A stretch of 62,966 nucleotides of DNA, filler included, from Octopus bimaculoides (taxonomy: Eukaryota), in assembly GCF_001194135.2 (NCBI RefSeq). It is 6 parts of 5 records of this genome, joined end to end, with 100 filler letters (N's around TTAATTAATTAA, not from the genome) between each part and the next. Parts side by side here need not be neighbours in the genome. Positions count along the whole stretch, not along the records: positions 8,164 to 27,915 come from NC_068983.1; 5 more parts are not named here. One strand, given 5' to 3'. Positions 6,653-24,289 of this stretch are shown here, piece after piece. Numbering within the stretch: position 1 is the stretch's first letter; each line of letters begins with the position of its first letter. Under the pieces are notes generated by a model. That model made no database searches, was not told where the DNA came from, and saw only the letters and a program-made list of their open reading frames with translations. Position numbers and translations under genes: made by a program.

Positions 6653-7421
6653 ACTTACGGAAAAGATTTTCTGTTCAAGAATCTTTTTCAGGTTTGAGTA
6701 AAAAACGGAAGAGGAAATAAGAAAGGGAAATAAATAAGTTCACGTGTGATTTAGTCATGTGACGATGGGACTTGATTGGCGGCGGGAATATGACGTCATG
6801 AGTGGAGGCACTATGGCCCAGTGGTTAAGGCAGCGGACTCGCGGTCATAGGATCACGGTTTCGATTCCCAGACCGGGCATTGTGAGTGTTTATTGAGTGA
6901 AAGCACCTAAAAGCTCCACGAGGCTCCGGCAGGGGATGGTGGCGAACCCTGCTGTACTCTTCCACCACAACTTTCTCTCACTCTTACTTCCTGTTTCTGT
7001 TGTACCTGTAATTCAAAGGGTCAGCCTTGTCACACTGTGTCACGCTGAATATCCCCCCGAGAACTACGTTATGGGTACACGTGTCTGTGGAGTGCTCAGC
7101 CACTTGCACGTTAATTTTACGAGCAGGCTGTTCCGTTGATCCGATCAACTGGAACGCTCCTCGTCGTAAGCGACGGAGTGCCAACAACAAATGGAGATAA
7201 TGAGACTTGGCTGCTTTTAATTATTGCAGAAGAGGAGAGACGCATGCGCATTGAACATGCCTCCAACCTGATGTTGACATCCGGTCAAATGTCTTACGCT
7301 TTAATTTCTCTTAATTAATTGACAATAAATCCATTTAGAATTCTTAGAATCCAGATCTCGACTACCACCATATACCCACATATATAAACAACACTATCCT
7401 TTCTGAAACATTTGCGTAAGT
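6653..7421. promoter_or_regulatory. Putative bidirectional promoter with two divergent first exons
   Basis: CACGTG 6741, ATTGG 6775, GGCGGGA 6781, TGACGTCA 6791, CGCATGCGCA 7241. Minus-strand GTAAGT donor at 6658-6653 and plus-strand GTAAGT donor at 7416-7421. Confidence 0.6.
6802..7190 (+). mobile_element. Full-length tRNA-derived SINE family A inserted in the promoter core
   Basis: A box TGGCCCAGTGG, B box GGTTTCGATTCC, body shared with 4587-4910, (CAA)n tail. Confidence 0.9.
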
Positions 7422-8163: not shown

Positions 8164-8196
<33 letters not shown>

Positions 8197-8340
8197 GGTA
8201 TGTATGATTCTGTATAGAAGAATATATTACTCAAAGAAATTCCAACTTTGATTTTCACGTTTTATTTACAATCTTATTTGATATAATATAAGATAATATA
8301 ATATAATAAAATGATAGAGTATTAGATATCCATTCTTGAT

Positions 8341-8385
8341 TGAACTAGTACTTTCAGGCGTTAAACTCTGCAATCTTCAGGTTCA
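8341..8385 (-). ncRNA. Minimal type I hammerhead ribozyme motif (minus strand)
   Basis: Minus strand reads TGAAC-CTGAAGA-TTGCAGAGTTTAACGCCT-GAAA-GTACT-A-GTTCA. Stem I TGAAC/GTTCA is perfect; stem II is partly decayed. Confidence 0.6.
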
Positions 8386-9207
8386 TGTAGCAGTAGTAAC
8401 AGTTATGTTTTACAATTTACAACTGTAGTGAGGTGGCTAAACTGTGTGCCTTAAATACATTTGTATAGGTTCCGGAAGGTTAATTGTTGCAAACTATATT
8501 CTGACCAATCAGTGCGTGGCTTTACTAAATTACATAAGTTGATTGGTGTTTTTGGTTTAGGCGTCACGGTTTGTTGAACATGTCAAGAGACCTGTATTTT
8601 GACCCTGGCCAAAGCAGTAATTGTTGGGTTATTTTTAGAAATGTAAACATTTTCCAGAGATTTTTACATTTCAGTTATTTTCACCATTATCATTTCCTTT
8701 ATTATTGTTGTCGTTGTTGCTGTTGTTGTTGTTAATGGTGGTGGTGGTGGTGGTGGTGGTAAGAGTAGCTGTGGTAATAGAACTTTAAACCCCAAAATAA
8801 GATTATTTTTGCTGACTTTTCTCTTGACTTAGCTAGTATTTCCCTGCTATCGTCATCATGAGCACCTTTAGTATTGTTGTTGTTGTTGTTGTTAAGGGTC
8901 GTAGCAGTAGAAATAGTACCTCTAAGTATTATTATTGTTTATTTAGCTTGGGCTGGAATTTATTAATAAAGTTCTTTTCTCTGATTTTTTAAAAATTTCA
9001 CTTGAACTGTGTAGTTTGTAGAATGGAAATATAAATATTTTCCGACCGTATGTTGCTAAACAAAACACCAATCAACTTAATTTAGTAAAATCACACACTG
9101 ATTGGTCAGAATACCAAATGGAGCCTATGCAAATGTATTTAAGGCACACAGTTTAGCCATCTCACTACAGTTGTAAATTGTAAAACATAACTGTAACCAC
9201 TACTATA

Positions 9208-9252
9208 TGAACCTGAAGATTGCATAGTTTAATACATGAAAGTACTAGTTCA
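9208..9252 (+). ncRNA. Minimal type I hammerhead ribozyme motif (plus strand)
   Basis: TGAAC-CTGAAGA-TTGCATAGTTTAATACAT-GAAA-GTACT-A-GTTCA. CUGANGA and GAAA cores, palindromic AGTACT stem III, predicted cleavage after A9247. Confidence 0.65.
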
Positions 9253-9344
9253 ATCAAGAATGGACATTTAATACTCTATCATTTTATTATATTATATTAT
9301 CATAAGATTGTAAATAAAACGTGAAAATCAGATAAAGTTGGAAT

Positions 9345-9498
9345 AGTGGTTGTGTGGTAAGTAGCTTGCTTACCAACCACATGGTTCCAGGTTCAGTCCC
9401 ACTGCATGGCACCTTGCGCAAGTGTCTTCTACTATAGCCTCGGGCCGACTAAAGCCTTGTGAGTGGATTTGGTAGACGGAAGCTGAAAGAAGCCTGTC

Positions 9499-9587
<89 letters not shown>

Positions 9588-9595
9588 TGTGTCTG
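9345..9595 (+). mobile_element. SINE family B with internal (GT)n
   Basis: gtgtggtaagtagcttgcttaccaaccacatggttccaggttcagtccc...gtggatttggtagacggaagctgaaagaagcc. Confidence 0.85.
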
Positions 9596-9759
9596 TGTTC
9601 CAGACATACAAGGTTAGAAAATACTAGCCAAAGGCGTCGCACAGTAGGACTGAACCCGAATCCAGGTAGTTCGAAACAAACTTCTTAAGATTTTGCACGT
9701 CTTCAGAGACTGACAGAAGGGAAACTCGAAGGTTTCTGCAAAGCGTGGACATGAAACAG

Positions 9760-10045
9760 AGTGGATTCTGTATCTTCAGCCTCTCACTTAACAAAGCTAT
9801 TTTCAAAGGCGCTTCTATGTATTACAGTGATGCTTTAAAACGATTTGGTTTCACTGGAAAAATTAAACGTATAAGAAATAATAAAACACCCAGTATCACG
9901 AAAAATATAACTAGAAATAGGAACATAATCTGGTATAATTTCTTTTTAACCCATAAGTCCTGTCCCCAGTAGTAAAAATTTTCTTTAATTTGTTGTAAAA
10001 CATTCCTCTACAAGCATAAGTATAATAATCTTGTCAATAAAATCT
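9760..10045 (+). mobile_element. Penelope-like element remnant (region C-terminal to the RT)
   Basis: Translates to YYSDALKRFGF...RNRNIIWYN, then frameshifted KIFFNLL..HxPLQHKY, matching the PLE motif YxDALKxSGY...RNIIWFNPP...HFP. Confidence 0.65.
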
Positions 10046-11264
10046 GCAAAAAATATTTCTTAGTCAACCACACCTAATTTCGGATAAATTTATCTAATAT
10101 GAACGTTAAAAAAATAATATTTCACTATTTTTAAATATGCAAAAAAATAGAGCGAATACCCACTTGAGCTTCGATATATCTTTAAATGCATTATTTACCG
10201 GGTGCCTCTGTGAATGCGAATTATTTTTCAATAATATATACTGATTTGGTGTCAAACTTTTTCACAATTCAACACCTTTATTCATTCGAAACTATCTTTG
10301 AACCAAGAATATAACTTTATCGACTTCCATTAGGAATTTCAGAAATTATATTAACTTTGTCGCCAGGTGGGAATTAATGTAAATAAGCAAATCATATAAC
10401 CATTCTAAAATTCCTTGTGGCTAAAGCAAATCAGAATCGTATGAAATTTTGGCAGACATTCTTCTTAATAAGCAAGCAGAAATGATTTCTACTTGCATAT
10501 ACAAAAGGTACGGGACGCTCAAAATTTTTAAGCCATTCGTCAAACAACTATTAGCACAAAAAAGGATGAAAGTTACTTCGTAATCTTCGTATGATATTGG
10601 ATGTTTTTAAAGTACAATGGTCTTTGTACTACCTTCATTGGATAACTCAATATTTTAGGTTTCTTGTAATCATTATAATACAATTTTCATTAAACCATTC
10701 CGGTTGAAAGAATTATAATATCCATTCGATTGACTTTTCCTGAAAACTCGTAATTACAGAACGAATTAAAATTTCAAGTGCAATCACAATTCAACAGCAT
10801 TTTAGTCATTATAAAAAATTGTGGAAAAATATTTACTCTTCCTTTATAAACCATTCTCTTGGCTTACATAACGCAGCTGTCACACAAACGAAAGCTTAAA
10901 AACAGTTAATGATAATTCATTGATTCAATGCACACTTAATCATATTTCTATTGTACAATGTTAGCACCCCATAAAGCCAAGAAAGCCAAGAAAATATTTT
11001 TAAAGAATATGATTCCTTCGATAAGCCTTAATCCTATAAAAATAGCTTTTATATCTCTAATACTCTTTAGAACATCGATCGACTCATCAGTTTTCCCTTT
11101 CCACGATGTTTTCTCTAACTTTTGCTTAAAAAGCTAAATATTTTTTATATATGCAAAAATTTTTTCAAAATTTGTTTCAGCACTATTCCTGAAGAATTCG
11201 AAAGAAAAACTGCACTGTAATTCAGTAATTTGTAACTGTTCTCATTTTTGCAAGTTACTGCCGA

Positions 11265-11440
11265 CATAGGTAGACTTCGTAGGAATGGGCCCGGTTATTG
11301 GAAGCTGAATGCATCGTTCTCGGTGCACCAAACTTACAGGGACCGAATGTCTGCGCACCATTAACGACAGCCTGGCGATTCCTCCACGCAGTAGATGTTG
11401 ACAGCAAATGGATCGTCCAACCAGGTATCATATCCAAACT
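11265..11440 (+). mobile_element. L1/Tx1-clade LINE ORF2 fragment
   Basis: GRLRRNGPGYWKLNAS matches the post-endonuclease G(P)GYWKLN motif of L1/Tx1 ORF2; frameshifted after it. Confidence 0.65.
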
Positions 11441-12177
11441 CTAGTAAATTGTTGTCACTGAGCAGGTGACCCTGTTTCTAAGCTGATACCAGGCCACGTG
11501 AATTTATACACTCCCACTCTTCGAACTGCCGTGTTGGTAGAAAGAGGAGGAAAAGAAAAGGAACATGGCAACTCACGTATTTGATGATTTCGATCACCGT
11601 GGAATTTGGAGTTTCTTTTGGAAAATTCTTTGGGCACCTACTGCTGGTCCTTGTACTTCAAACTTTTCACATGACTAGGGAAATCTCCTTCAATATTTTT
11701 TTATGTTTTCATGTCCAACATTAATTTAAAATATTTTATGTACTTGGAAAGTGCTGGTCTTGAAGACTTCTCCCTCTTTTTTAATCTTTTCCTTTTGTGC
11801 AAGGAAGGACATCAGTTTTTTTCTTAGTGTTCCTTATCAATACGAAGTTTGGGCGCATGTTTGTATTTCTGATGTTATTCTTGTGTGGTTTTCCTTTTTG
11901 TTGACATGAGTGTTCGTGATGGTTGGTGGTGGTGGTGGAGTTGTTGTAGGTGTGGTGTCGGTGATGTCGGGATTGCGTGGTTCGTTCAGAGAGAGTGAGT
12001 GTGTAATATTTTTAAAAAATTATTATCTTTCTTTTGATTTACCTGTGTGTCCCTCCCCTTAACAGATGACATTTTCACATCGAAATGATCCGATGCGAGA
12101 GGGGTTGAAGATATATTTCCGTATGTGTGTCCATAAATATGTTCCAAAAAGAGAGAAGAGGAGAGTAATGCAGGAGT

Positions 12178-12750
12178 TTAGATATTTTCCCGGATAGTGA
12201 GTTCTGGTTCTTTACTGTGTTCGTCATTGATGGTCATGTTGTTGGTACTGCTGTTGTTGGTACTGCTGTTGTTGTTGCTGCTGCTGCTCTGGTTCTTGCT
12301 CCTTTCGCTACTACTATTGCTGGTGGTACCACAGTATACTGTCGTTGTTGGGATTGTGGTGTCAGCAGTTGCGGAAGCCCCCTCTCTCCTGATTTTGGTT
12401 GAAGACAAAAAGTTCGTTTCATTTTGAGGAGGGTGTCACTGCCCTCTAAAGCAATACAGGCTACAAACGATTAGATGTCCAATTCAAGTGGAACTCACTC
12501 TGTTTTATCGTAGATGGAAGTTATGGAGTACTTCAGCGCGAGAGTATCGCTTGTAAAGAGGATTTCCACACCCCCGAACTGCCTTGCTCTGGTCACATGG
12601 TCTATATTTTTTCATATCCCTTTCAGGCATTCTTCTTTGTCGTTTAGAGAGAGAGTCAAGTACTATTTTGATTTTTCAATTATCTCAGTAAAAAGTTATC
12701 CACACGTGGAGCGCCTTTATCACTTACCTTGCCGTCGCCGCTATATGTTT
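12178..12750 (-). mobile_element. Possible LINE ORF1 (gag-like) remnant
   Basis: Decayed frame IEKSK*YL...KNIDHVTRARQFGGVEILF followed by a Thr/Ser/Asn-rich tract. Recalled similarity to Tx1-like ORF1, not verified. Confidence 0.35.
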
Positions 12751-13159
12751 TGGCTGCTATCACTGTTGTTGTTATTGCTGCTGCTATTGTTGCTATTAGT
12801 GTTAATACTGTTGTTTTTGCTGGTGTCATTGTTGTTTTTGTTGTTAAACATGTTGTCATAATTGTTGTTGCTATCAAGTGTGTGCTTTTTCATAAAGCCT
12901 GTAGTGGTTGAGAATTTCCTTACTGAATCTGTTGGTAGGCTTGAACGATACCATAACTACAACAAGAAAAAAACTGAGAAAAGTAAATAAATATTACTAT
13001 AATTGTGTCATTTATGGCATAATTTGGTGACCCTCTCTTCATCCAGTAAAGTAGGGCGTCCTTATCTAAAGTTATAACGAAAATTAGCAAGAGTAAACAA
13101 ATTATTTTCAACAAAATCCAACAAATCTTAGGGAACCGATGCAAAGTACGCCCAACAAA

Positions 13160-13164
13160 AGCAA

Positions 13165-13238
<74 letters not shown>

Positions 13239-13272
13239 NNNNNNNNNNTGCTCTTCCGATCTCTATTTGATT

Positions 13273-13326
<54 letters not shown>

Positions 13327-13327
13327 A
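13160..13327. repeat. (ACT)n(AAT)n / gap / (GTT)n microsatellites
   Basis: Direct reading. Confidence 0.95.
13249..13262 (+). other. Probable Illumina adapter remnant at a contig edge
   Basis: TGCTCTTCCGATCT immediately after the N gap equals the 3' end of the TruSeq read-primer sequence. Confidence 0.8.
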
Positions 13328-13883
13328 TCGAATGAGAGAGCAGTGCATGCCATCAAACTGACGCTGGGGTAAAATATACGAAACCCAGTATACCTATCAT
13401 GACTACCCGTCTGATAAGGGTACACCAGGCACACGCATCACAACCATATGTGCGTGACACAGTGATCCCATATCAAGATAAACAGTACGTGACCTTCCAG
13501 GTGGGGCCCAGTTAAAAGTTTCTTCAAGTCGAGTAGCCCATCCTGCTCAAAAGGTCCCTGAATAAAGATTGCTTAAAGATGTAGAACGAAGCACCAATGT
13601 TTCTAAAGTTGAATGATTCAAATCCCAAAGAATTCCTCTCAACACATGGCTATGATACTCCCCCACTACTTCTGTTCGTGTTCAGGGATGCACATATCGT
13701 CAGCCACCAAGGGACATGCTTAACTGGTTAAGGTCAAACAACTGACAAGGAAATCTGTAGTATTGAGTAGAATATTTGCTGTAGCCCATCTTTTATACCA
13801 AGACAAAACAATGTACATGATAACACTTCCAATCATTTAAGATGAGAAGCCATGAGAGCCACTGCCTGGTACTGCATCAGGGC

Positions 13884-13887
<4 letters not shown>
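13328..13887 (-). mobile_element. ~560-bp interspersed repeat bounded by trinucleotide microsatellites (non-autonomous retroelement-like)
   Basis: Non-coding block with sharp edges between (GTT)n and (ATT)n. Recalled as a common octopus repeat; family not assigned. Confidence 0.5.
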
Positions 13888-13949
<62 letters not shown>

Positions 13950-13984
13950 CATCATCATTTTTCAACCTTAAGAATAAGCAAGTG

Positions 13985-14735
13985 TCTCCATTGTGCCACA
14001 TCTGTAATAGAGTGGACGAAACCATTGCCCATATGGAGAATGAAGAATACCCTAGATCTATCCAAAACTATTACAAGTTGTGGTGACATAATGAGTAGCT
14101 AAAGTGCTACTTTGGAAACTGTGTGAAAAAGTAGGGGATAGAGAGAAGAAAAACGTGGTATGAGCACAACCGCAAAGAGCGACGGAGTGGGAAACCTGCA
14201 AAATCCTGTGGGTTTTTCCAATCCAAATAGATCAGGTGGTAGAGCATTATAAACAGGACCTTGTAGTGATAGACAAGGTGCACCACATGTGTTATATAGT
14301 TGGTATTGCGTGCCCCTTTGATCCACGAATAATCAAGAAGAAAGGTGAAAAAATAAATATATATAATCCTTTTAAGTACGAAATAGCCCGGTTATGGAAA
14401 ATGAAGAAGGGGAAGATTGTACCAATTATTGTTGGGTCCTTGGGGATAGTATCAGAAGGCATCAAGAGGAATATACAGGAAATCGAAATAGAGTGCCCAG
14501 TAGTACTGTTACAAAAGGTTTGCTTCTTTGGCACGACCAGAATAATCAGAAAAGTATTAGAGAGTTGAAAAAGAAGAAATAGCATGGTACTGTGGGCTGT
14601 AGGCAGAAAACCCCGACTCTAGGGGTTCAAATAAAATCTGAGTGAAGAAGAAGAAGAAGAAGAAGAAGAAGAAGAAGAAGAAGAAGAAGAAGAAGAAGAA
14701 GAAGAAGAAGAAGAAGAAGAAGAAGAAGAAGAAGA
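13985..14735 (+). mobile_element. 5'-truncated R4/Dong-clade (RLE) non-LTR retrotransposon with (GAA)n tail
   Basis: CCHC knuckle LCHICNRVDETIAH, then KILWVFPIQID and the restriction-like endonuclease QDLVVIDK...IACPFD...IARLWKM...PIIVGSLG...GTTRIIRKVLES*; short 3' UTR; (GAA)n at 14643-14735. Confidence 0.88.
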
Positions 14736-16654
14736 GGCGACTTTGGCAATATTTGAACTCAGAACGTAAAAGGCTGCAATTTTTCTCGTTGTTCTACAGA
14801 TTTCCTGTCTGTCACAATATTAATTAATTATGAAGGTCTTTAAANNNNNNNNNNNNNNNNNNNNNNNNNNNNNNNNNNNNNNNNNNNNNNNNNNNNNNNN
14901 NNNNNNNNNNNNNNNNNNNNNNNNNNNNNNNNNNNNNNNNNNNNNNNNNNNNNNNNNNNNNNNNNNNNNNNNNNNNNNNNNNNNNNNNNNNNNNNNNNNN
15001 NNNNNNNNNNNNNNNNNNNNNNNNNNNNNNNNNNNNNNNNNNNNNNNNNNNNNNNNNNNNNNNNNNNNNNNNNNNNNNNNNNNNNNNNNNNNNNNNNNNN
15101 NNNNNNNNNNNNNNNNNNNNNNNNNNNNNNNNNNNNNNNNNNNNNNNNNNNNNNNNNNNNNNNNNNNNNNNNNNNNNNNNNNNNNNNNNNNNNNNNNNNN
15201 NNNNNNNNNTATATTTATATATATATACCAAGTGTTGATATAATGAAACCTGGCTAGAAACCATAATGTTTGAAACCCGCTAAAGTCAGTTCTTCTAATT
15301 GTGTATTAACTGCTTAACACAGACAAGTAAATATTTTGTAAACACAAAGATAAAATCATGATTCAGATCATAAAAGCTTATAAACATATGCCAATATTAC
15401 CCGATGTACGCATTGATATTACAAGACGTCAAAGAGGCGCTGGTTGTGTTTGACAAGGGGAGATAATTGTCAGAGAATTAAGTGCAATGACAACGTAGTC
15501 GTTATGTTTACATATGAACGATGTACTTAATGAACACACTACGTATTATTCTCTGCATTATGTTATTCGCTACTATGTGTGTTGTTTGCTATCAAGTCTT
15601 TGAACGCATACATTGCTGGTGTCTACTTACTCGTCAGATAACTACAAGTTTGATGACCCAAAGCTACTACCGACTTGGTGTCTCCACTACTTTCAATAAA
15701 TATTTACCGCACCGATTTTTAATTTCCAGGGCCTTTATGACAATAGCAAGTATTTAAAATTGGAAGAGGCGATAAGTGCTGGACAGGCTTCAGTTTAGAG
15801 TATTTTTTTAAAGGATTGGATTATATATTAAACTGTTTGAACTGCCCTTTGTAAATATTCTTTTTATGTATGTGACATGTGTTTTAGAGAAAGCGGTAAG
15901 TTCACTCTCTTTCGTCTGCACTGCACAAGTTCCATTCCTAGTTGAAGGCATTTCACTTGATTTACGGCGCCATTGCATTCAGTAAAGGTATAACTGTGTT
16001 GCATTGATTTTAACTCCCCAACAAATATGGGATAAAGTAAAAAAGAGAAAACTGAATGACACTTTGTCCATCATTTATGATGAGCTCTATAGAAAGCTAT
16101 AACACCTGGGGGGTTGAATTTGCAACGCAAGTTCGATTCACTTCTCGTGTGTCGATGCAATTGGAAAGGCATAACTATCATAACTTTCCCTTCCTTGAAA
16201 TGAAATTCCTTTGTTTCAAATTAAACCCAATTAATAATGACTACTATAGAATATATAATAAACATTCTTGGCCAGTTAAAAATCTATTCCATCAACAGAT
16301 GTCGGATCATTGCAAACACTTATGGCACATCTACTTAGGAAATATCAAGGGTGTGAGCTAGAAAAAAACACTAACCTGACCTTCAATCATTAACCTATCT
16401 CCTAGTATCCACCATTGTGACACAGTCCCTCTTAATCCTTCATGAAGTTCCTATTAACCATCCTACATTTCCTAGTTAAACACAGGTTTTCTCATTTCTA
16501 GAGGATATGCGTATGATTGCTTAAGGTTCATGCCTTTCTCTAAAGCTTTATAGCTGCTTGTTTTGCTCTACCTTATAGATTTCAGTAATATCTCTCTTCA
16601 CTAAACACGCAAGGCCACTGAAAAAGCGTTTTATTCTGAGCTCTTTTAGTAGAA

Positions 16655-17000
16655 CGTCCTTCTTGCCTCTCTCACTCTCTCTCTCCCTCTCTCTCTCTCT
16701 CAATCTCTCTATCTCACTCTTTTTCTCTTTGTATCTAGCTAGCTAGCTATCTTTAAACTTTTATCGCTCTTAACACTTCCCTTCCTAGATCACATCACTC
16801 TAGCTGTCTATCGCTCAAAGTGTATGTCTTTTTTATCTCTTTCACTTTCAACCTTTCTTGTTCAATTTCTCACGCTCCAATTACTCTCAATATTTCAATC
16901 TTCCTTACTCTCAATTTCTCTCTCATTCTCTTTCTCTTTAACCCTCTCTCTCTTTCTTTCTCTCCCCCCTCTCTCAAACACCACTCTCTCTCTCTCACTC
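16655..17000. repeat. CT-rich low-complexity tract
   Basis: Degenerate (CT)n. Confidence 0.8.
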
Positions 17001-17299
17001 AAATACAATACTCGTGTAAAAACCGACCCTAGTTTTACAGAATCAAGAGACTTTCCCATACATAAATGTTACGACCTGGAAATGAGATCTTTTCAAGTTA
17101 ACCCATAACACTATGTGTTTTGTTATACAATTCACAAAAATATTTGGCTGCAGATTTCTTAAAATTCGTTATTAAATGAGTAGTATCTTGTTATAATGTC
17201 TTTTTGCAGTTCAACTGATCTCAGTCCCCGTTTAGTGTTTATGGAATACAGTTGTATTGCTGAGGTTTTTAAATTTTGCCGTAATTTTATGCAAAAATG

Positions 17300-18500
17300 T
17301 TCTCCAGGAAAACAACAAATACACAACAGCTTCAACGTTAAACGTTACTGAGGTTGCTGAGAAGACAAATAGCTGTGTTCCACGCATCAAAATAATTTTG
17401 TTTCGGGGAAGCTAGCGTGAGACTGGAGACAGATATAAAACGAACTTCAGACAATGCTTAAAGGAAAATGTGCTCACAATGGTAAACCAAATAGAAGTCT
17501 ATAACTAAAGAAAAATTTTGCAGAGTGGCTACTTAAAAATTCTCAGAATGGGAATTGTGTTACTCATGCTTCCCTCCAAATCCAATTACGAAAAGAAGCA
17601 AAGAAGGATGGAATTTTGGTTTTTAAAGCAAATGCTGGATAGTACACTAGGTTCATGAAATACTATAACTTAGTACTTCGGTAGAGAAATAAGAGTGCAC
17701 AAAAGTTGTTGGCTGACCACGAATATAAAATATTACAGTTTTACTAGTTTGTAACGAGAAATCAGCAAAAGTTATGAAGTATTGAGCACGTGAACGAAAT
17801 GCTTATTACTCTTGATATGTGAAGATTTGAACTGTGAAGCAAAGAGATTAAAAAAAAACGTAATGATGAGAACTACTAGCTACAAAAATGTAGGATTACA
17901 TTAGTGCTTTCTTGTATAGCTGGTAGTATACTAAGTTAAAACTGATCGAAGTTTATAAGAGAAACACATTGCCAAGGAAGAAATTTTCAATGGAATTGTT
18001 ATCCATGTGCATCCACAAAACTGAATGATTCAGAATAAATATAGTAAATGAATAAAGGAAGTTTAGAATTTACGACATGGTTAATTACGAAAAAAACAAT
18101 CTGGGACCAACTTAGGGCAAATTTATTGAAAAATGTTGTTTATAACCTCCGATCATAAAACGCTGACAGTTGTAATTTCTAGCGGAGTTAAAAGGATTTT
18201 GCAACTTTTAGATGTAAATGTCAATAAGTAATTTGATAAGAAAGGCGGGAAGACATTTAGAGAATCAAGTGGAATAGCATAATGGAGAAAAGTCATACTC
18301 GACAAGAGGTAGTATACAGGCTTCATCACTGTCTCTGGTAAGGGATCTAGTTAGGGATCATTGAGTTACGGAAGGAAATAAAAGCTAACATTATTGTCAA
18401 GTCATTCAAGAAAAGTGGAGTTTTGAATGCATTGGGCGGTACAGAAGATTATTGTCTATAGGAGGGCGTGGGTGAGTTGTGAAGTGGATGATGTGCTATC
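17300..18500 (+). mobile_element. Decayed pogo-family (POGK-like) transposase
   Basis: Frameshifted motifs YTTAFKLNVTEVAEKTN, RFMKYYNLVLR, AQKL, ITLVLSCIAG, KRNTLP, IVIHVHPQNW and LQ-LDVNVNK (HTH plus DDE_1). Confidence 0.75.
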
Positions 18501-19829
18501 TCTAACTATGGATAACGAAATGGAAAATGATTTTTACGATTATATCATTCATTCTGGTAATTATAAAGCTTTATTTAGTACTGATGGTGAAGAGCGATTT
18601 AGCAGGAACAACTGTGCTAGAAATGAATCATATAATTGTAAAATAATATTATATTAATTTTCGATTTCACTTTTTACATGCATAAATAGAAGTTTACTAA
18701 CATATTTTTGTTTCTATTGTCATTATCAACTTTTATGTTTGCTTTATATTTTATGATTTTAAGCTGCATTGTTTTCATTAAAAGTAGAAATGCTACGAAG
18801 AAAACGGTGGTCTATAATCTAGCTATGAAAATGAAAAAAAATGTTTTCTGTGGCGATTGTTTGCATGGAAAGTAGTGCTGTGTTTTTACATCTTTTATCA
18901 ACACTAGTTAATAAAGCCTTAAGCTGCGTTGAATTAAAAAAAGAAAAATAAAAGAAATACTGATACACAATACATGTGATGAGTGAGATTTAACCTCGAA
19001 TATGAAGATAAATGTGGATAGAGAGCTGTGGCACAAAACATACTCAACTGGGGATGTTTACTGCTGAGCAGTTAGCAAGAGTGTCCATATTATTACAGCA
19101 AGTTAATGGTAATATACAAAAAATCTGTGATGTAAATTGACTTCTCTGCTGAGTGTGTCTTATTGTTTTTATTTGATAGAAAGTGTACCTATGTAATATT
19201 AGTATTATTACTGAAATTCATTGTTTTCTTTTTATTTAAAGATCACATATGCTTCAGCTACTGATGCAATACTTTGGATTCTAGTCTAACCCATGAATTT
19301 AACCTTAACAAAATAGTCTAAAATGTTTCGACTTTACAGTATGTATGTTAAAAATCAGTGGAAAAACAGTGCAGTTCCAGTAATGTCCTTTGCTAGAATG
19401 ATGTCATATGCGTTAAGTTACCGACATTCTCTTGTCATTCTTGGAGTCAGCAATTCAGTGATCTCCAGTGATGGCCCATTGAAATTCTGCAACAAATAAC
19501 CCTATTGTCTACAAATTGTATAAAATAAGCCGAAGCAACAACGGTATTATTGAAGGTATCACACATTTCATTTGGCTTGAGAAAGTGATATATTCATGAT
19601 CTTGAAAAGTATGCTCAAAACTTTAATATATATTTATTTTTCTGAAATTTACATTGTGTAATTTTACATTCTAAATATTTTTCTCTATATTTTTGTAAGT
19701 AAAATATTTTCAATATTGCGTTTTAACTCATGTGTAGTTGGATGCTCTGTCCGTCCATCAGTAAAATGTATCTGTTCAAAAGGTGTATAGATTACGTGTG
19801 TATAAAGCATGATCGAAGTAGCTTAGAAA

Positions 19830-20160
19830 GGAGTGAAAAGTAGTATCACTAGCGTAAGAGTGGACGTTGTTGAACGTGACAGCCAGTAGATCATTGATGT
19901 ATGAAGACAGTACGGAATAAAACCGAACTCAGGAACACACCAATGTCGATAGAATGTGAAAGAGAGTTCCATCAACACTCGTACGGACAATGTGATCCGA
20001 TATAAAGCTACCCATCATAGAGATGGGCGACGGGTAGAATCAATAAGTGGCAGTTCTGATAGGAAGTGCGCATCCCAGATGCGGTCGAATGCTTTGTTGA
20101 TGTCGAGGGTGTTTCCATTGCTTTCGCCAAATTTCTCTGAGATAGGATACACTGAAGGCT
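19830..20160 (-). mobile_element. CR1/Jockey-type reverse transcriptase fragment
   Basis: LDINKAFDRIW, SFISD...VDG, GV..SVL..., YINDLL...VHSYASDT (decayed YADD). Confidence 0.8.
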
Positions 20161-20224
20161 GACATAAGAGACTAAGTAGGTACTTTTGACTGCACAGAAT
20201 ACATACTCTCGGTCAATAAAGGAA

Positions 20225-20227
20225 GAC

Positions 20228-20323
<96 letters not shown>

Positions 20324-20337
20324 AGAGATAGAAAGAA

Positions 20338-20388
<51 letters not shown>

Positions 20389-20390
20389 GA
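20225..20390. repeat. Compound (GATA)n(GA)n(GACA)n microsatellite
   Basis: Direct reading. Confidence 0.95.
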
Positions 20391-20858
20391 ACGGTTCATA
20401 CTATCGAAGAATATCTACTTTTGAGATGTTGGCCGTGATTGCAATTGGGCGACTTTTAACAAAGTCTGACGGATTGACTTTCTTTTGAATGGGATGCACT
20501 GAATTATATTTGCGAACGTAAGCATATAATCAAGGCAATTTCCATACTTTATACAAAAATGAGCTAAGAGATACAAATCAGGGTGGCTAGCGGCATATAT
20601 ATGAGCTTTCTTTCTCTCTCTCTCTTCTCTCTCCTTTCTCTCTCTCTCTCTCTCTCATGCACATGTATACATTCATACATATATAGAGACAGATAGATAC
20701 GTATATACTTAATAATCATCCATTCGTTCATTACCACTACCCCTCCGTCTGTACTCCTTTAAGCGAATTGTCCGTCTGTTTTTCACTCTTTTGCCTGTCT
20801 GTGTGTCGTTTCATCTTATTTCTGCCTCTTTTTTCGCCACAATTCTCTTTCTTTCCTT

Positions 20859-20918
<60 letters not shown>

Positions 20919-21190
20919 NNNNNNNNNNNNNNNNNNNNNNNNNNNNNNNNNNNNNNNNNNNNNNNNNNNNNNNNNNNNNNNNNNNNNNNNNNNNNNNNNN
21001 NNNNNNNNNNNNNNNNNNNNNNNNNNNNNNNNNNNNNNNNNNNNNNNNNNNNNNNNNNNNNNNNNNNNNNNNNNNNNNNNNNNNNNNNNNNNNNNNNNNN
21101 NNNNNNNNNNNNNNNNNNNNNNNNNNNNNNNNNNNNNNNNNNNNNNNNNNNNNNNNNNNNNNNNNNNNNNNNNNNNNNNNNNNNNNNNNN

Positions 21191-21448
21191 ATCGACTTAA
21201 TCTGTTTGTCTGTCCTTGTTTGTCCCCTCTGTGTGTAGCCCCTCTTGTGGGCAGTAAAGAAATAGGTATTTCGTCTGCCGCTACGTTCTGAGTTCAAATT
21301 CCGCCGAGGTCGACTTTGCCTTTCATCCTTTCGGGGTCGATTAAATAAGTACCAGGTACGCACTGGGGTTGATATAATCGACTTAATCTGTTTGTCTGTC
21401 CTTGTTTGTCCCCTCTGTGTGTAGCCCCTTGTGGGTAGTAAAGAAATA
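21191..21448 (+). mobile_element. SINE family C, head-to-tail dimer
   Basis: The tail ...gtgggcagtaaagaaata is joined directly to ggtatttcgtctgccgctacgttctgagttcaaattcc of the next unit; the two 3' ends are nearly identical. Confidence 0.85.
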
Positions 21449-22326
21449 ACACATCTGGGTTTTTTTTCTCTCGAATTTCTCTGTAGCATATATCTTTATA
21501 GAGAAAAGTATCACAATGTTTATGGATAATTGAAAGGACATTGTCAAGACCGGTAGCCTAATTGGTTTGATGTGACTGAAGGTACTTCCGAATAGAAAGT
21601 AGTGAAACTGGATCTGACCAAGAGACTTAATTCTCGCCGGTTTACTTCACCTAAATCCAAAGAGAAACCGCCTAAAAGTACAGCTAATCGCTGTAAGAAG
21701 CACATATACGAAACAATTTAATACTTTTTTAATTAGGGGCCACTTTGTCATAATTATACACTGTGATTATGAGAGTGAATAATCCATTAGCTTCCATTGC
21801 TAAGTTGAAAGCAACTCAGGGTCAAATGAAAGTAACAGGAAGCTGTTTCAAAACTCATCCTCAGATCACAGTCCATACAGTTTCTTTTAGTAACGACTAG
21901 GCAAGCTTTTGAAACACCAACTTTTTCTTTTCTACATATAAAGATGGCATTTAGTTGTTCTAATATTTGTCAGATATTTTCGTGATTTGCTTAGTTTGCA
22001 GCAAGCTTGACAATAACCTTCTTCCTTACATGAATCCTTATCGAGATTATCTCTCATAGGGGCTTATCGCATAATTATTATATAGCTTCATCATCTAAAT
22101 AAAGAGCCTCTCCTTGGTGTCTGAAAGAATTTCTAGATATTGTTTTTGTTGCATATTCTTCTTTGTCTTACATCAAATATGTTTTGGTACAACGAAAGCT
22201 TGATAAGCGAAGTAAAGACAGTTTAGTGAAACCTCTCCTTTTTTCTGTTTGTTTTTTTTTTTTTTGAAATACTAATACCTTTTACTATCTTTGTTTTTAA
22301 TATCAACCTACCTCATCTCCCTTACA

Positions 22327-22362
<36 letters not shown>

Positions 22363-22504
22363 CTACTTTAGAGTTTGGCATAAATACACTGATGTTACTG
22401 ATTTTCTGTGGATGCCACCACTTTCGATAAATATGATGCTGCTCATCCTTCATATACCTATGTATGTGCATGGGCATTTATGATGTATATGTATGCATAT
22501 ATAT

Positions 22505-22580
22505 CATTATCATCATCATCATTATTTAACATCCATGTTCTGTGCTGGCATGGATTGGACGTCTTGACAGGATGCGATGA
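22505..22580 (-). mobile_element. RTE-type tail fragment
   Basis: (CAT)n-tttaacatcc...gctggcatggattggac. Confidence 0.6.
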
Positions 22581-23709
22581 GTCCAAGGACAGAATCGTGA
22601 TCCAATGTCTGCTTTACCGAAGGAATGATGAGAGAATCATAAAGAAGTAAAATCTGAAAATTTCATCGATCTCTTTTTCTCTATTAGCTCTACTTCTCTT
22701 CATTTCTGGGGTCTTTTTAAATGGATTGTTACTTAAGTCTAGCCAGTCATTTTAGTCTTCATTCTAAATACGGTGGCGACTAATTTTGTTAATGCCCACC
22801 TTGCAGCACACTCACATAGTCTGATGGAATGAGACCATATACCTATAAAGAAATGTGTAGTAATACCAAAACAACATTTTTACGACAATTGATCGCATTC
22901 AAACAAAAGTAAGATAATTTACAATAAAAAAAATATATATAAGAAAATGTTAAACAAACACTTCTAAAAATGTTGCAGTGCATTCATATTCCTATCGTTT
23001 AAATATATNNNNNNNNNNNNNNNNNNNNTATATATATATATATATATATATATTATGAAGTTCTTCACGACAAGGAGTGAATATCAAAGGATAATGTAAG
23101 GAATGATTTGCTAAATGATGTGCGCCAAAAATTTTCAAAATGCCATTTAACCGAAATTTCTTTTTTGGGGAAAGAAACTAAGAAAGTTTGCGTACTTGCC
23201 TATTGTCGTTGTCACTCAGCTCCTAAACAGTTCCATTTGAGTAAACCTGTGATTAAATATATTCAATCTATGACCGTATCGATATTTTCTCAAATGTAGT
23301 GTAACTTGGACAATATTATTGAAATTCTTCTGCTTGTAAGACAATAAGGCATAATTCGAGGAAGATTTAACATATATTTCTAGCAGGTTGAACAAGCACA
23401 TAAAAGAGAGGTGGGGAACTTTTACAGTATCAAGGGGCGAGTAGCGAAAGTAGAAGTACCCGTGGGAGTACATATCTGCAACGATATGTAACTTAGATTA
23501 AATTACTGTTTTGGTCTTAATGCTTAAACCGTTTTTTGCAAATGGATTTTTAGAAACTTTGTCAGCGGGCGGTTTCGAATTTGATGCAGGCGAAATTTCA
23601 TCCACAACCGAGGGGTTCCAGACACTTACATACAGGATCCCTCGTTAGTTGCATTGTGTTACGTAACATCAGACAAGCAAGTAGATGTAATTCTTTCTGT
23701 TCGCTTAGA

Positions 23710-23760
23710 TCAGCGGTTCTCAAACTATGGGTCGCGACCCACATTAGTTTGTGGCATATT
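23710..23760 (+). mobile_element. Possible hAT (Charlie-like) terminal sequence
   Basis: cagcggttctcaaactatgggtcgcgaccc; no clear matching right end found. Confidence 0.35.
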
Positions 23761-24289
23761 TCTGAAAGAGTCGTGAAAACAAAAACAAAAACTTTTACTT
23801 ATAAAATATTTTGTTAAATATATAATTTTCGTGGATTTGTTATTCAATAAACTGAAGGGTTTTTAATAATATATATTTTTTTAATGCAGACATAAGAATA
23901 CAACATAAAATCTACAAGACATTACAAAATGTAAGAATCGATTACAATTGTCGGTTATGATTCTACCTTTCCTGCGTATTATGATACATTTGGTCTCGAA
24001 GAGTTTCCTGGTTTATTTTGAAGCTCATCCAATACTTCAGCTAATATGATCTTCAACTAATTCTTTCAAGCGATTTTTAAGAAAACCGAAACCTAGCCTT
24101 TTCATACACATAGCCTCAAATATAGAATCTGTTTACTATTTATATACAGTTAAAAACACTTTAGGACTAAACCATAAGTATGCTTTTTATATGAATATAG
24201 ATATATAAAAGGATTAATGGTCGCAAAGATATTTTTCTGAGCCGTAAAGACAGGAACTCGATATATAATACACAGATAGTATAATGTTT

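What the first reader, a model, noticed from the sequence alone, without database searches (positions are those of the whole stretch)
8239..9344. Inverted ~300-bp repeat carrying a hammerhead ribozyme motif on each strand
Seen: both arms contain TGAAC-CTGAAGA-[stem II]-GAAA-GTACT-A-GTTCA (plus 9208-9252, minus 8385-8341). Stem I (TGAAC/GTTCA), both catalytic boxes and a palindromic AGTACT stem III are identical in the two copies. Stem II differs in a way that fits decay from TGCA...TGCA, and the 10.1-11.1 position is U-U. Known: minimal type I hammerheads with palindromic stem III, which can act as dimers, occur in Penelope-like terminal repeats and animal retrozymes, and PLE repeats can be inverted. 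A PLE remnant lies 0.4 kb downstream. Inference: a transcript crossing this region in either direction meets a potential self-cleavage site, and the arms can also fold into ~300-bp dsRNA. It lies just downstream of the orphan plus-strand donor at 7416, so it could limit one output of the bidirectional promoter.
Basis: partly seen in the sequence, partly recalled or inferred. Interest (0 to 1): 0.85.

Follow-up and report, generated by a model that had tools for sequence, protein, structure and literature searches.

The report
Decayed inverted retroelement ends with hammerhead relics
Two ~300-bp copies of a mobile-element end sit head-to-head, each with a hammerhead-ribozyme-like motif of the minimal kind known from Penelope-like retroelements, but both motifs look degraded, so this is an ordinary relic and not a working RNA switch.

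Summary
Arms 8239-8560 (reverse strand) and ~9056-9344 form an inverted repeat: 82% over 326 columns with indels, 92% over a 185-nt core. Each arm carries TGAAC-CTGAAGA-N18-GAAA-GTACT-A-GTTCA at the stated coordinates. A descriptor that ignores helix II is expected 0.002-0.004 times per shuffled piece.

The motif matches minimal type I hammerheads of Penelope-like elements (PLEs) and animal retrozymes in four respects: 5-bp helix I, intact core, 1-bp helix III with a palindromic tetraloop, and U.U at the base of helix II (precedent in axolotl HHR_Amex2).

In the motif's sense direction each arm reads CCAAT, ATTGG, TATTTAA, motif, AATAAA, with the arm ending 22-26 nt after AATAAA. The 3' ends point outward, as in PLE head-to-head insertions. 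A 5'-truncated RT-linker remnant lies at 9751-9939.

Present function is unlikely:
- Helix II has 4 of 6 pairs (right) and 2 of 6 (left).
- Rfam Hammerhead_1 gives no hit.
- The ribozyme fold is predicted unfavourable.
- In a read-through RNA the sense motif is buried in a ~280-bp duplex.

Other genomic copies could not be retrieved, so family-level conservation is untested. Verdict: a known kind, of low interest.

The parts
8239..8560 (-). Left arm: terminal unit in reverse orientation, with its 3' end at 8239
   Evidence: blastn 9056-9344 vs 8560-8239, 82%/326, E=3e-94; alignment
9056..9344 (+). Right arm: terminal unit in forward orientation, with its 3' end at 9344
9208..9252 (+). Hammerhead-like motif, right arm. 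Helix I 9208-9212/9248-9252; CUGAAGA 9213-9219; helix II/loop 2 insert 9220-9237; GAAA 9238-9241; GUACU 9242-9246; A17 9247. The predicted scissile bond lies between 9247 and 9248.
   Evidence: pattern scan; folding
8341..8385 (-). Hammerhead-like motif, left arm. The predicted scissile bond lies between 8346 and 8345 on the minus strand. Helix II retains only 2 of 6 pairs.
8561..9055 (.). Unique centre between the arms. It is rich in (GTT)n/(GGT)n microsatellites, contains an internal ~170-bp direct duplication, and has no recognisable coding remnant. It may be the longer 5' part of one of the two copies.
   Evidence: the repeat finder D2, D3; six-frame segments
9068..9142 (+). Promoter-like module in the right arm: CCAAT 9068, ATTGG 9101, TATTTAA 9136. 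The same order occurs in the left arm at 8546, 8509 and 8457 on the minus strand. Inference only.
   Evidence: motif positions
9313..9318 (+). AATAAA hexamer 26 nt before the right arm's end. The left arm has it at 8266-8261 on the minus strand, 22 nt before that arm's end.
9751..9939 (+). 5'-truncated remnant of the linker that follows the RT domain of a retroelement protein of PLE type. By eye it continues, with stops and frameshifts, into a GIY-YIG-like stretch near 10230-10300.
   Evidence: phmmer hits P0002/P0003; tblastn E=7e-9. Relative P0005 has a YRDD-containing RT-like C-terminal part and PF26215 HTH_animal (weak).

Best explanation
The region is a decayed head-to-head pair of 5'-truncated copies of the 3'-terminal unit of a retroelement. 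That unit is either the pseudo-LTR type of a Penelope-like element or a non-autonomous derivative mobilised by one.

Read in its own sense, each unit carries CCAAT/TATA promoter-like boxes, a minimal type I hammerhead motif, and AATAAA about 25 nt before its end. The two 3' ends point outward.

In the active ancestor the hammerhead would have processed multimeric or tandem element RNA. It would have worked as a dimer through the palindromic AGUACU, which gives a 6-bp helix III. Helix II was probably UGCAU/AUGCA above a U.U base.

In this locus the motifs are relics. Helix II has mutated in both arms and the ribozyme fold is not favoured. Any read-through RNA would fold into a long hairpin, which could be a dsRNA substrate, and would not cleave itself.

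Shown here: the repeat, the motif, the outward orientation, the predicted folds and the neighbouring remnant. Inferred: PLE origin of the arms, past catalytic activity and the role of the promoter-like boxes.
For: - Exact core, 5-bp helix I, A15.1-U16.1 closing a palindromic GUAC, and A17, in both arms. Expected 0.002-0.004 per shuffled piece.
- Architecture as described for PLE min-HHRs, including pairs of motifs on opposite strands 100-700 bp apart in Schistosoma (PMC4209133).
- A 1-bp helix III with a palindromic tetraloop, and U.U at the base of helix II, both occur in abundant axolotl hammerheads that still cleave (PMC7229834).
- PLEs often carry an adjacent inverted 5'-truncated copy, have the hammerhead near the 3' end and the TSS in the pseudo-LTR, and favour microsatellite targets (PMC8557442).
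- Here the 3' ends face outward, AATAAA lies 22-26 nt from each end, CCAAT/ATTGG/TATTTAA lie upstream of the motif in both arms, and (AC)n lies 45 bp from the left end.
- All four differences between the arms within the motif lie in helix II, and each breaks a pair in one arm only. A 5-bp ancestral helix is therefore reconstructible. The hypothetical restored sequence folds as a hammerhead monomer (-5.8 kcal/mol) and as a dimer with a 6-bp helix III (-18.0).
- A retroelement RT-linker remnant lies on the same strand 400 bp downstream.
Against: - No other copy of the arm could be retrieved. Family-level conservation and covariation of helix II are therefore untested.
- G10.1-C11.1, called highly conserved in PLE min-HHRs, is U.U in both arms, so it was already U.U in their common ancestor.
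- There is no Rfam Hammerhead_1 hit.
- The arms are not contiguous with any RT/GIY-YIG coding sequence.
- The downstream remnant is separated from the right arm by two SINE-like fragments and (GT)n, and no arm-like sequence follows it.
- The promoter-like boxes and AATAAA are short motifs in 65% A+T DNA and could be chance.
- The ancestral helix II is reconstructed by choosing the pairing state at each variable site, without an outgroup.
Confidence: 0.6

Rival explanations
1. The arms are the terminal inverted repeats of a non-autonomous DNA transposon (foldback or MITE-like), or a plain inverted segmental duplication. On this view the hammerhead-like string arose by chance once and was copied into both arms.
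For: - Long inverted arms of similar length (~290-320 bp) around a non-coding, microsatellite-rich centre.
- Helix II is poor and 10.1/11.1 is U.U in both arms.
- There is no Rfam hit.
- A descriptor without helix II would still occur by chance a few hundred times in a genome of gigabase size (extrapolated).
Against: - The chance expectation is about 3e-5 for the ~640 nt of the two arms.
- No target-site duplication is visible at 8239/9344, and no known TIR terminal signature is present.
- The outward 3' ends with AATAAA about 25 nt from each end fit a retroposed transcript end better.
- The palindromic helix III, the 5-bp helix I and the helix II pattern all match the published PLE and retrozyme hammerheads.
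Confidence: 0.22
2. Each arm is a monomer of an animal non-LTR retrozyme, a ~300-nt non-autonomous element that spreads through hammerhead-processed circular RNA. The two monomers were inserted in opposite orientations.
For: - The unit size of ~290-320 bp and the low G+C fit retrozyme monomers (150-450 bp, below 45-50% GC).
- Mussel retrozymes also lack the loop 1-loop 2 contacts (PMC7229834).
- Retrozymes are proposed to derive from PLE pseudo-LTRs (bioRxiv 10.64898/2026.07.22.740005).
Against: - There is no head-to-tail tandem arrangement.
- Both units end at the same point 92-102 nt beyond the predicted cleavage site, after AATAAA. That suggests a linear transcript end, not a permuted copy of a circle.
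- The helices are of the minimal type, not the canonical type.
Confidence: 0.12
3. The motifs are active today and limit or process transcripts crossing the region in either direction.
For: The catalytic core and the cleavage-site context are intact in both arms. A U.U base pair and a 1-bp helix III are tolerated in axolotl hammerheads.
Against: - In read-through RNA the sense motif is 42/45 nt paired to the other arm, and the arm duplex is about -398 kcal/mol.
- The ribozyme fold is unfavourable in isolation and in short outward transcripts.
- Dimer formation needs a second sense copy, which one transcript does not contain.
- PLE min-HHRs cleave poorly even when intact.
Confidence: 0.04

Closest known systems
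Minimal type I hammerheads in the pseudo-LTRs of Penelope-like elements (Cervera & de la Pena 2014, PMC4209133)
   Same: Type I topology; a short 5-bp helix I without a defined loop 1; an intact CUGANGA/GAAA core; a palindromic 15.2-16.2 segment that implies action as a dimer; scattered, mostly truncated copies; and pairs on opposite strands a few hundred bp apart.
   Different: Helix II here is short and mismatched instead of 6-8 bp. G10.1-C11.1 is replaced by U.U. No clear bulged nucleotide lies between positions 9 and 10.1. No contiguous PLE ORF is present.
Axolotl/newt retrozyme hammerheads HHR_Amex1 and HHR_Amex2 (Cervera & de la Pena 2020, PMC7229834)
   Same: [quoted passage not shown] Amex2 has a U.U mismatch at the base of helix II. 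The units are ~330-350 bp and A+T-rich.
   Different: Those hammerheads occur in long head-to-tail tandem arrays, keep loop 1-loop 2 tertiary contacts, and are expressed as circular RNAs. This locus is an inverted pair with no tandem array.
Complex PLE insertions with an inverted 5'-truncated copy next to the pseudo-LTR (Craig et al. 2021, PMC8557442)
   Same: Head-to-head inverted copies with their 3' ends outward, microsatellites at the flanks, and the hammerhead near the 3' end.
   Different: No full-length copy is attached. The nearby RT-linker remnant is separated by later SINE-like insertions and cannot be shown to belong to the same element.

Membership tests
Hammerhead ribozyme, type I | Conserved core C3-U4-G5-A6-N7-G8-A9 and G12-A13-A14, A15.1-U16.1 pair, non-G at position 17 | tested here: met
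   CTGAAGA ... GAAA-GTACT-A is exact in both arms
Hammerhead ribozyme, type I | Helix I formed by the 5' and 3' flanks (open end) | tested here: met
   TGAAC/GTTCA gives 5 Watson-Crick pairs, with no extension beyond them
Hammerhead ribozyme, type I | Stable helix II, normally closed by G10.1-C11.1 | tested here: not met
   U.U at 10.1/11.1 in both arms. The right arm has 4 of 6 possible pairs with an internal C.A mismatch and the left arm has 2 of 6. Helix II pair probabilities are about 0.
Hammerhead ribozyme, type I | Match to the Rfam Hammerhead_1 covariance model | tested here: not met
   No hit at the gathering score, none at E<=10 on 1.5 kb and none on 81 nt. Minimal PLE variants are not what that model describes, so this result is weak evidence.
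Hammerhead ribozyme, type I | Self-cleavage 3' of position 17 | not testable with these tools
   This needs in vitro transcription or RNA end mapping at 9247/9248 and 8346/8345.
PLE minimal hammerhead (min-HHR) | Palindromic 15.2-16.2/loop 3 allowing a dimeric helix III | tested here: met
   AGUACU is self-complementary. Cofolding of two copies forms the 6-bp intermolecular helix.
PLE minimal hammerhead (min-HHR) | [quoted passage not shown] | tested here: not met
   No register with a 5' bulge improves the pairing. At most 5 bp can be reached, and only in a reconstructed ancestor.
PLE minimal hammerhead (min-HHR) | Location in the terminal repeat of an element encoding RT and GIY-YIG endonuclease | tested here: inconclusive
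   The arms are non-coding. An RT-linker remnant lies at 9751-9939 on the same strand. It sits beyond two SINE-like fragments, and no arm-like sequence follows it.
PLE minimal hammerhead (min-HHR) | Many genomic copies forming consensus families with compensatory changes | not testable with these tools
   No eukaryotic genome collection was available. Scans of the metagenome, prokaryote-genome and viral collections and a peptide search all returned nothing.
Animal non-LTR retrozyme | Head-to-tail tandem repeats of 150-450 bp, each with a type I hammerhead | tested here: not met
   Only two copies are present, in inverted orientation, and no direct repeat of the unit exists in the piece.
TIR DNA transposon / MITE | Terminal inverted repeats flanked by a target-site duplication | tested here: inconclusive
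   Inverted arms are present. No duplication is seen at 8229-8238 versus 9345-9354, but the right flank is a later SINE-like insertion.

The most novel reading that the evidence does not exclude
The arms belong to a live family of PLE-derived units in this genome (probably a cephalopod) whose hammerhead naturally has a U.U base in helix II and a 1-bp helix III. In this reading the two outward-facing promoter-like modules give two separate sense RNAs, and these cleave by pairing in trans through AGUACU. A head-to-head pair would then be a functional unit of ribozyme dimerisation.
Probability: 0.05. Interest if true: 0.5.

Novelty: new member of a known kind. Interest (0 to 1): 0.2.

Why it matters
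If the family consensus keeps the motif, it would add a mollusc/cephalopod-type example to the catalogue of minimal hammerheads carried by Penelope-like elements and retrozymes. It would combine two traits so far described separately, a 1-bp palindromic helix III and a U.U-based helix II. The locus itself is a decayed repeat. Its most likely present-day effect, if it is transcribed at all, is formation of a ~280-bp double-stranded RNA hairpin.

Tried and rejected
- Rfam at the gathering score over the whole piece, and at E<=10 over 1.5 kb and over 81 nt, gave no hammerhead family. The other weak hits (SCARNA7, mir-297 and similar) fall on the (AC)n run and are artefacts.
- Search for other copies. 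blastn (word size 7) and an nhmmer profile of the two arms against the piece found only the two arms.
- The weak resemblance at 27729-27775 (E=21) has a broken core (CTGAAGT), and its flanks do not align. I rejected it as chance.
- Exact-pattern scans of the metagenome collection (twice), the prokaryotic genomes and the viral contigs returned nothing.
- A concatenated peptide query made from all open frames of the arms found nothing.
- Exact-product look-ups of four window ORFs, meant to identify the source record, found nothing.
- The organism is therefore not established by a tool. From memory, the SINE-like element at 9345-9498 resembles the abundant octopus SINE.
- Pfam on the downstream frames and on two other ORFs gave nothing. 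Pfam and PDB searches on the relatives P0004-P0006 gave nothing useful.
- ARAGORN found no tRNA.
- The supplement of the 2014 PLE hammerhead paper is not held, so no real min-HHR sequences were available for a direct alignment.

Full report
**Observation**

The piece (8164-27915) is 65% A+T. It is full of microsatellites, SINE-like and LINE-like fragments and assembly gaps, so it looks like intergenic or intronic animal DNA.

The inverted repeat is real.
- The repeat finder reports arms 8289-8473 / 9120-9304 (185 nt, 92% complementary) and 8497-8532 / 9078-9113 (36 nt, 92%).
- blastn aligns 9056-9344 to 8560-8239 at 82% over 326 columns, E=3e-94.
- The MAFFT alignment shows that homology stops exactly at 8239 and 9344 on the outside and fades at about 8560-8570 and 9040-9056 on the inside, with several 4-17-nt indels.

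A regular-expression scan finds TGAAC-CTGAAGA-N18-GAAA-GTACT-A-GTTCA at + 9208-9252 and - 8385-8341 and nowhere else in the piece.

**Chance**

I used a descriptor that asks for the core, a self-complementary segment between A15.1 and U16.1, a non-G at position 17 and a 4-5-bp helix I, but no helix II. It is found 0.002-0.0037 times per dinucleotide-shuffled piece (3000 shuffles). The two observed copies are one event that was duplicated with the arm.

Extrapolated to a gigabase genome, this loose descriptor would still give a few hundred chance hits. The motif alone is therefore not proof.

The arms differ by 13 substitutions in the 185-nt core. Four of these lie in the 18-nt helix II/loop 2 insert and none in the 27 nt of core, helix I and helix III. 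The enrichment is mild (binomial about 0.03, my arithmetic), and the absence from the core is expected about 10-13% of the time. This pattern says little about constraint.

**Anatomy of the motif**

- Helix I is 5 bp and cannot be extended.
- The core is canonical.
- A15.1-U16.1 closes a GUAC tetraloop, so AGUACU is a palindrome.
- A17 precedes the helix I 3' strand, which places the predicted scissile bond between 9247 and 9248 (and between 8346 and 8345 on the minus strand).
- Helix II, read without a bulge, is as follows:
  - Right arm: U.U, U-A, G-C, C.A, A-U, U-A.
  - Left arm: U.U, U.C, G-C, C-G, A.C, G.A.
- Each of the four differences breaks a pair in one arm only. Without an outgroup this is a choice, not a result.

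**Folding**

- The hammerhead fold costs +0.9 kcal/mol (right) and -0.4 (left), against MFEs of -3.1 and -4.8.
- A hypothetical restored sequence reaches -5.8 as a hammerhead. As a homodimer it forms the 6-bp intermolecular helix III with swapped helix I strands (-18.0).
- Rfam finds no hammerhead family at the gathering score, at E<=10 over 1.5 kb or over 81 nt.

**Context of the arms**

Read in the sense of its motif, each arm has the same order of short signals:

| Signal | Right arm (+) | Left arm (-) |
|---|---|---|
| CCAAT | 9068 | 8546 |
| ATTGG | 9101 | 8509 |
| TATTTAA | 9136 | 8457 |
| motif (CTGAAGA) | 9213 | 8380 |
| AATAAA | 9313 | 8266 |

The unit ends 26 nt (right) and 22 nt (left) after the AATAAA hexamer. 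The two 3' ends therefore face outward and the units are head-to-head.

The centre (8561-9055) is non-coding and rich in (GTT)n/(GGT)n. The left end is 45 bp from an (AC)n run at the piece's edge. The right end abuts a SINE-like element (9345-9498), its (GT)n tail (9499-9590) and a second, inverted SINE-like fragment (about 9604-9690; I2). No target-site duplication is visible.

**The downstream remnant**

The frame at 9751-9939 (+) matches short predicted proteins P0002 and P0003 in an exhaustive phmmer search (E about 2e-4 to 7e-4 against 1.8 billion proteins). By tblastn against the piece the E-value is 7e-9.

The relatives P0004-P0006 place this stretch directly after an RT-like C-terminal part ('GLYRDDGL', 'FLDTTLNLNNG...YHKPN'). 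P0005 carries a weak precomputed PF26215 HTH_animal hit. By eye the window frame continues, with stops and frameshifts, into a Zn-finger-like and a GIY-YIG-like stretch ('IIYTDLVSNFFTIQHLYSF').

From memory, this is the RT-linker-endonuclease layout of C-terminal-endonuclease PLEs. No tool confirmed the clade. No arm-like sequence follows the remnant, so it cannot be tied to the arms.

**Comparison with the literature**

Cervera & de la Pena 2014 describe PLE min-HHRs with the following properties:
- type I topology with a 4-5-bp helix I;
- a long helix II with a 5' bulge and a conserved G10.1-C11.1;
- a palindromic 15.2-16.2, with action as dimers;
- very low activity in vitro;
- thousands of mostly solitary copies, and pairs on opposite strands 100-700 bp apart.

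Craig et al. 2021 describe four relevant features: an inverted 5'-truncated copy next to the pseudo-LTR, the hammerhead near the 3' end, the TSS inside the pseudo-LTR of Penelope, and a microsatellite target bias.

Cervera & de la Pena 2020 describe axolotl HHR_Amex1, with a helix III of one pair and a palindromic tetraloop. They also describe HHR_Amex2, with U.U at the base of helix II, which still cleaves. The U.U is therefore not disqualifying.

A 2026 preprint derives animal retrozymes from PLE pseudo-LTRs.

**Mechanism**

The best reading is a decayed head-to-head pair of PLE-type terminal units, or of a non-autonomous derivative, each keeping a relic of a dimer-dependent minimal hammerhead.

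Present-day cleavage is unlikely.
- In a read-through RNA of either direction the sense motif lies in the distal arm. 42 of its 45 nt pair with the complementary arm, there are 275-280 inter-arm pairs, and cofolding of the arms gives -398 kcal/mol.
- In short outward transcripts helix I has 3-7% probability and helix II about 0.
- One transcript never holds two sense copies.

The more likely fate of any read-through RNA is a long double-stranded hairpin.

**Limits**

No eukaryotic genome collection was available, and every attempt to retrieve further copies failed. The source organism was not established by any tool.

**Verdict**

- The structural interpretation is supported at moderate confidence (about 0.6, plus about 0.12 for the retrozyme variant).
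- The functional inference is not supported.
- This is a new member of a known kind, of low interest.

Noticed in passing
window 9345-9690: A SINE-like element lies at 9345-9498, with a B-box-like GGTTCAGTCCC and a (GT)n tail at 9499-9590. It is followed by an inverted fragment of a related SINE-like sequence at about 9604-9690 (arms 9370-9431 / 9615-9676, 71% complementary). ARAGORN and Rfam call no tRNA here. From memory it resembles the abundant octopus SINE.
   Followed up: partly
window 9068-9142 and 8546-8451 (minus strand): Both arms carry CCAAT, ATTGG and TATTTAA in the same order and spacing upstream of the hammerhead-like motif, pointing outward. They would make a divergent promoter pair about 680 bp apart. 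The motifs are short in A+T-rich DNA and no test was possible.
   Followed up: partly
window 9751-10330: A 5'-truncated, frameshifted remnant of a retroelement protein (the linker after RT, then Zn-finger-like and GIY-YIG-like stretches). Only 9751-9939 is supported by a search. The rest was read by eye.
   Followed up: partly
window 14236-14568 (+) and 24438-24719 (+): Two open frames that look like non-LTR retrotransposon remnants: 'ACPFD...IPIIVGSLG...' and 'GDFFNFPNIRW', the latter endonuclease-like. Pfam gave no hit.
   Followed up: partly
window 8561-9055: The centre of the inverted repeat holds (GTT)n and (GGT)n runs and a ~170-bp internal direct duplication (8685-8724 vs 8854-8893, 80%).
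   Followed up: no
window 11270-11600: A block richer in G+C with a stop-free stretch on the minus strand ('GYDTWLDDPFAVNIYCVEESPGC'). It may be a coding remnant of another element or an exon.
   Followed up: no
window ~13200-13300, 14850-15240, 20900-21200: Runs of N (667 in all) inside the piece are assembly gaps that cut several listed ORFs. The flanks are microsatellite-rich.
   Followed up: no
window 27729-27775: This stretch is loosely similar to the hammerhead-like segment (AGCTGAAGT...CATGAAACTATTAGTAGTTCA). The nhmmer E-value is 21, the core is broken and the flanks do not align, so I judged it chance.
   Followed up: yes
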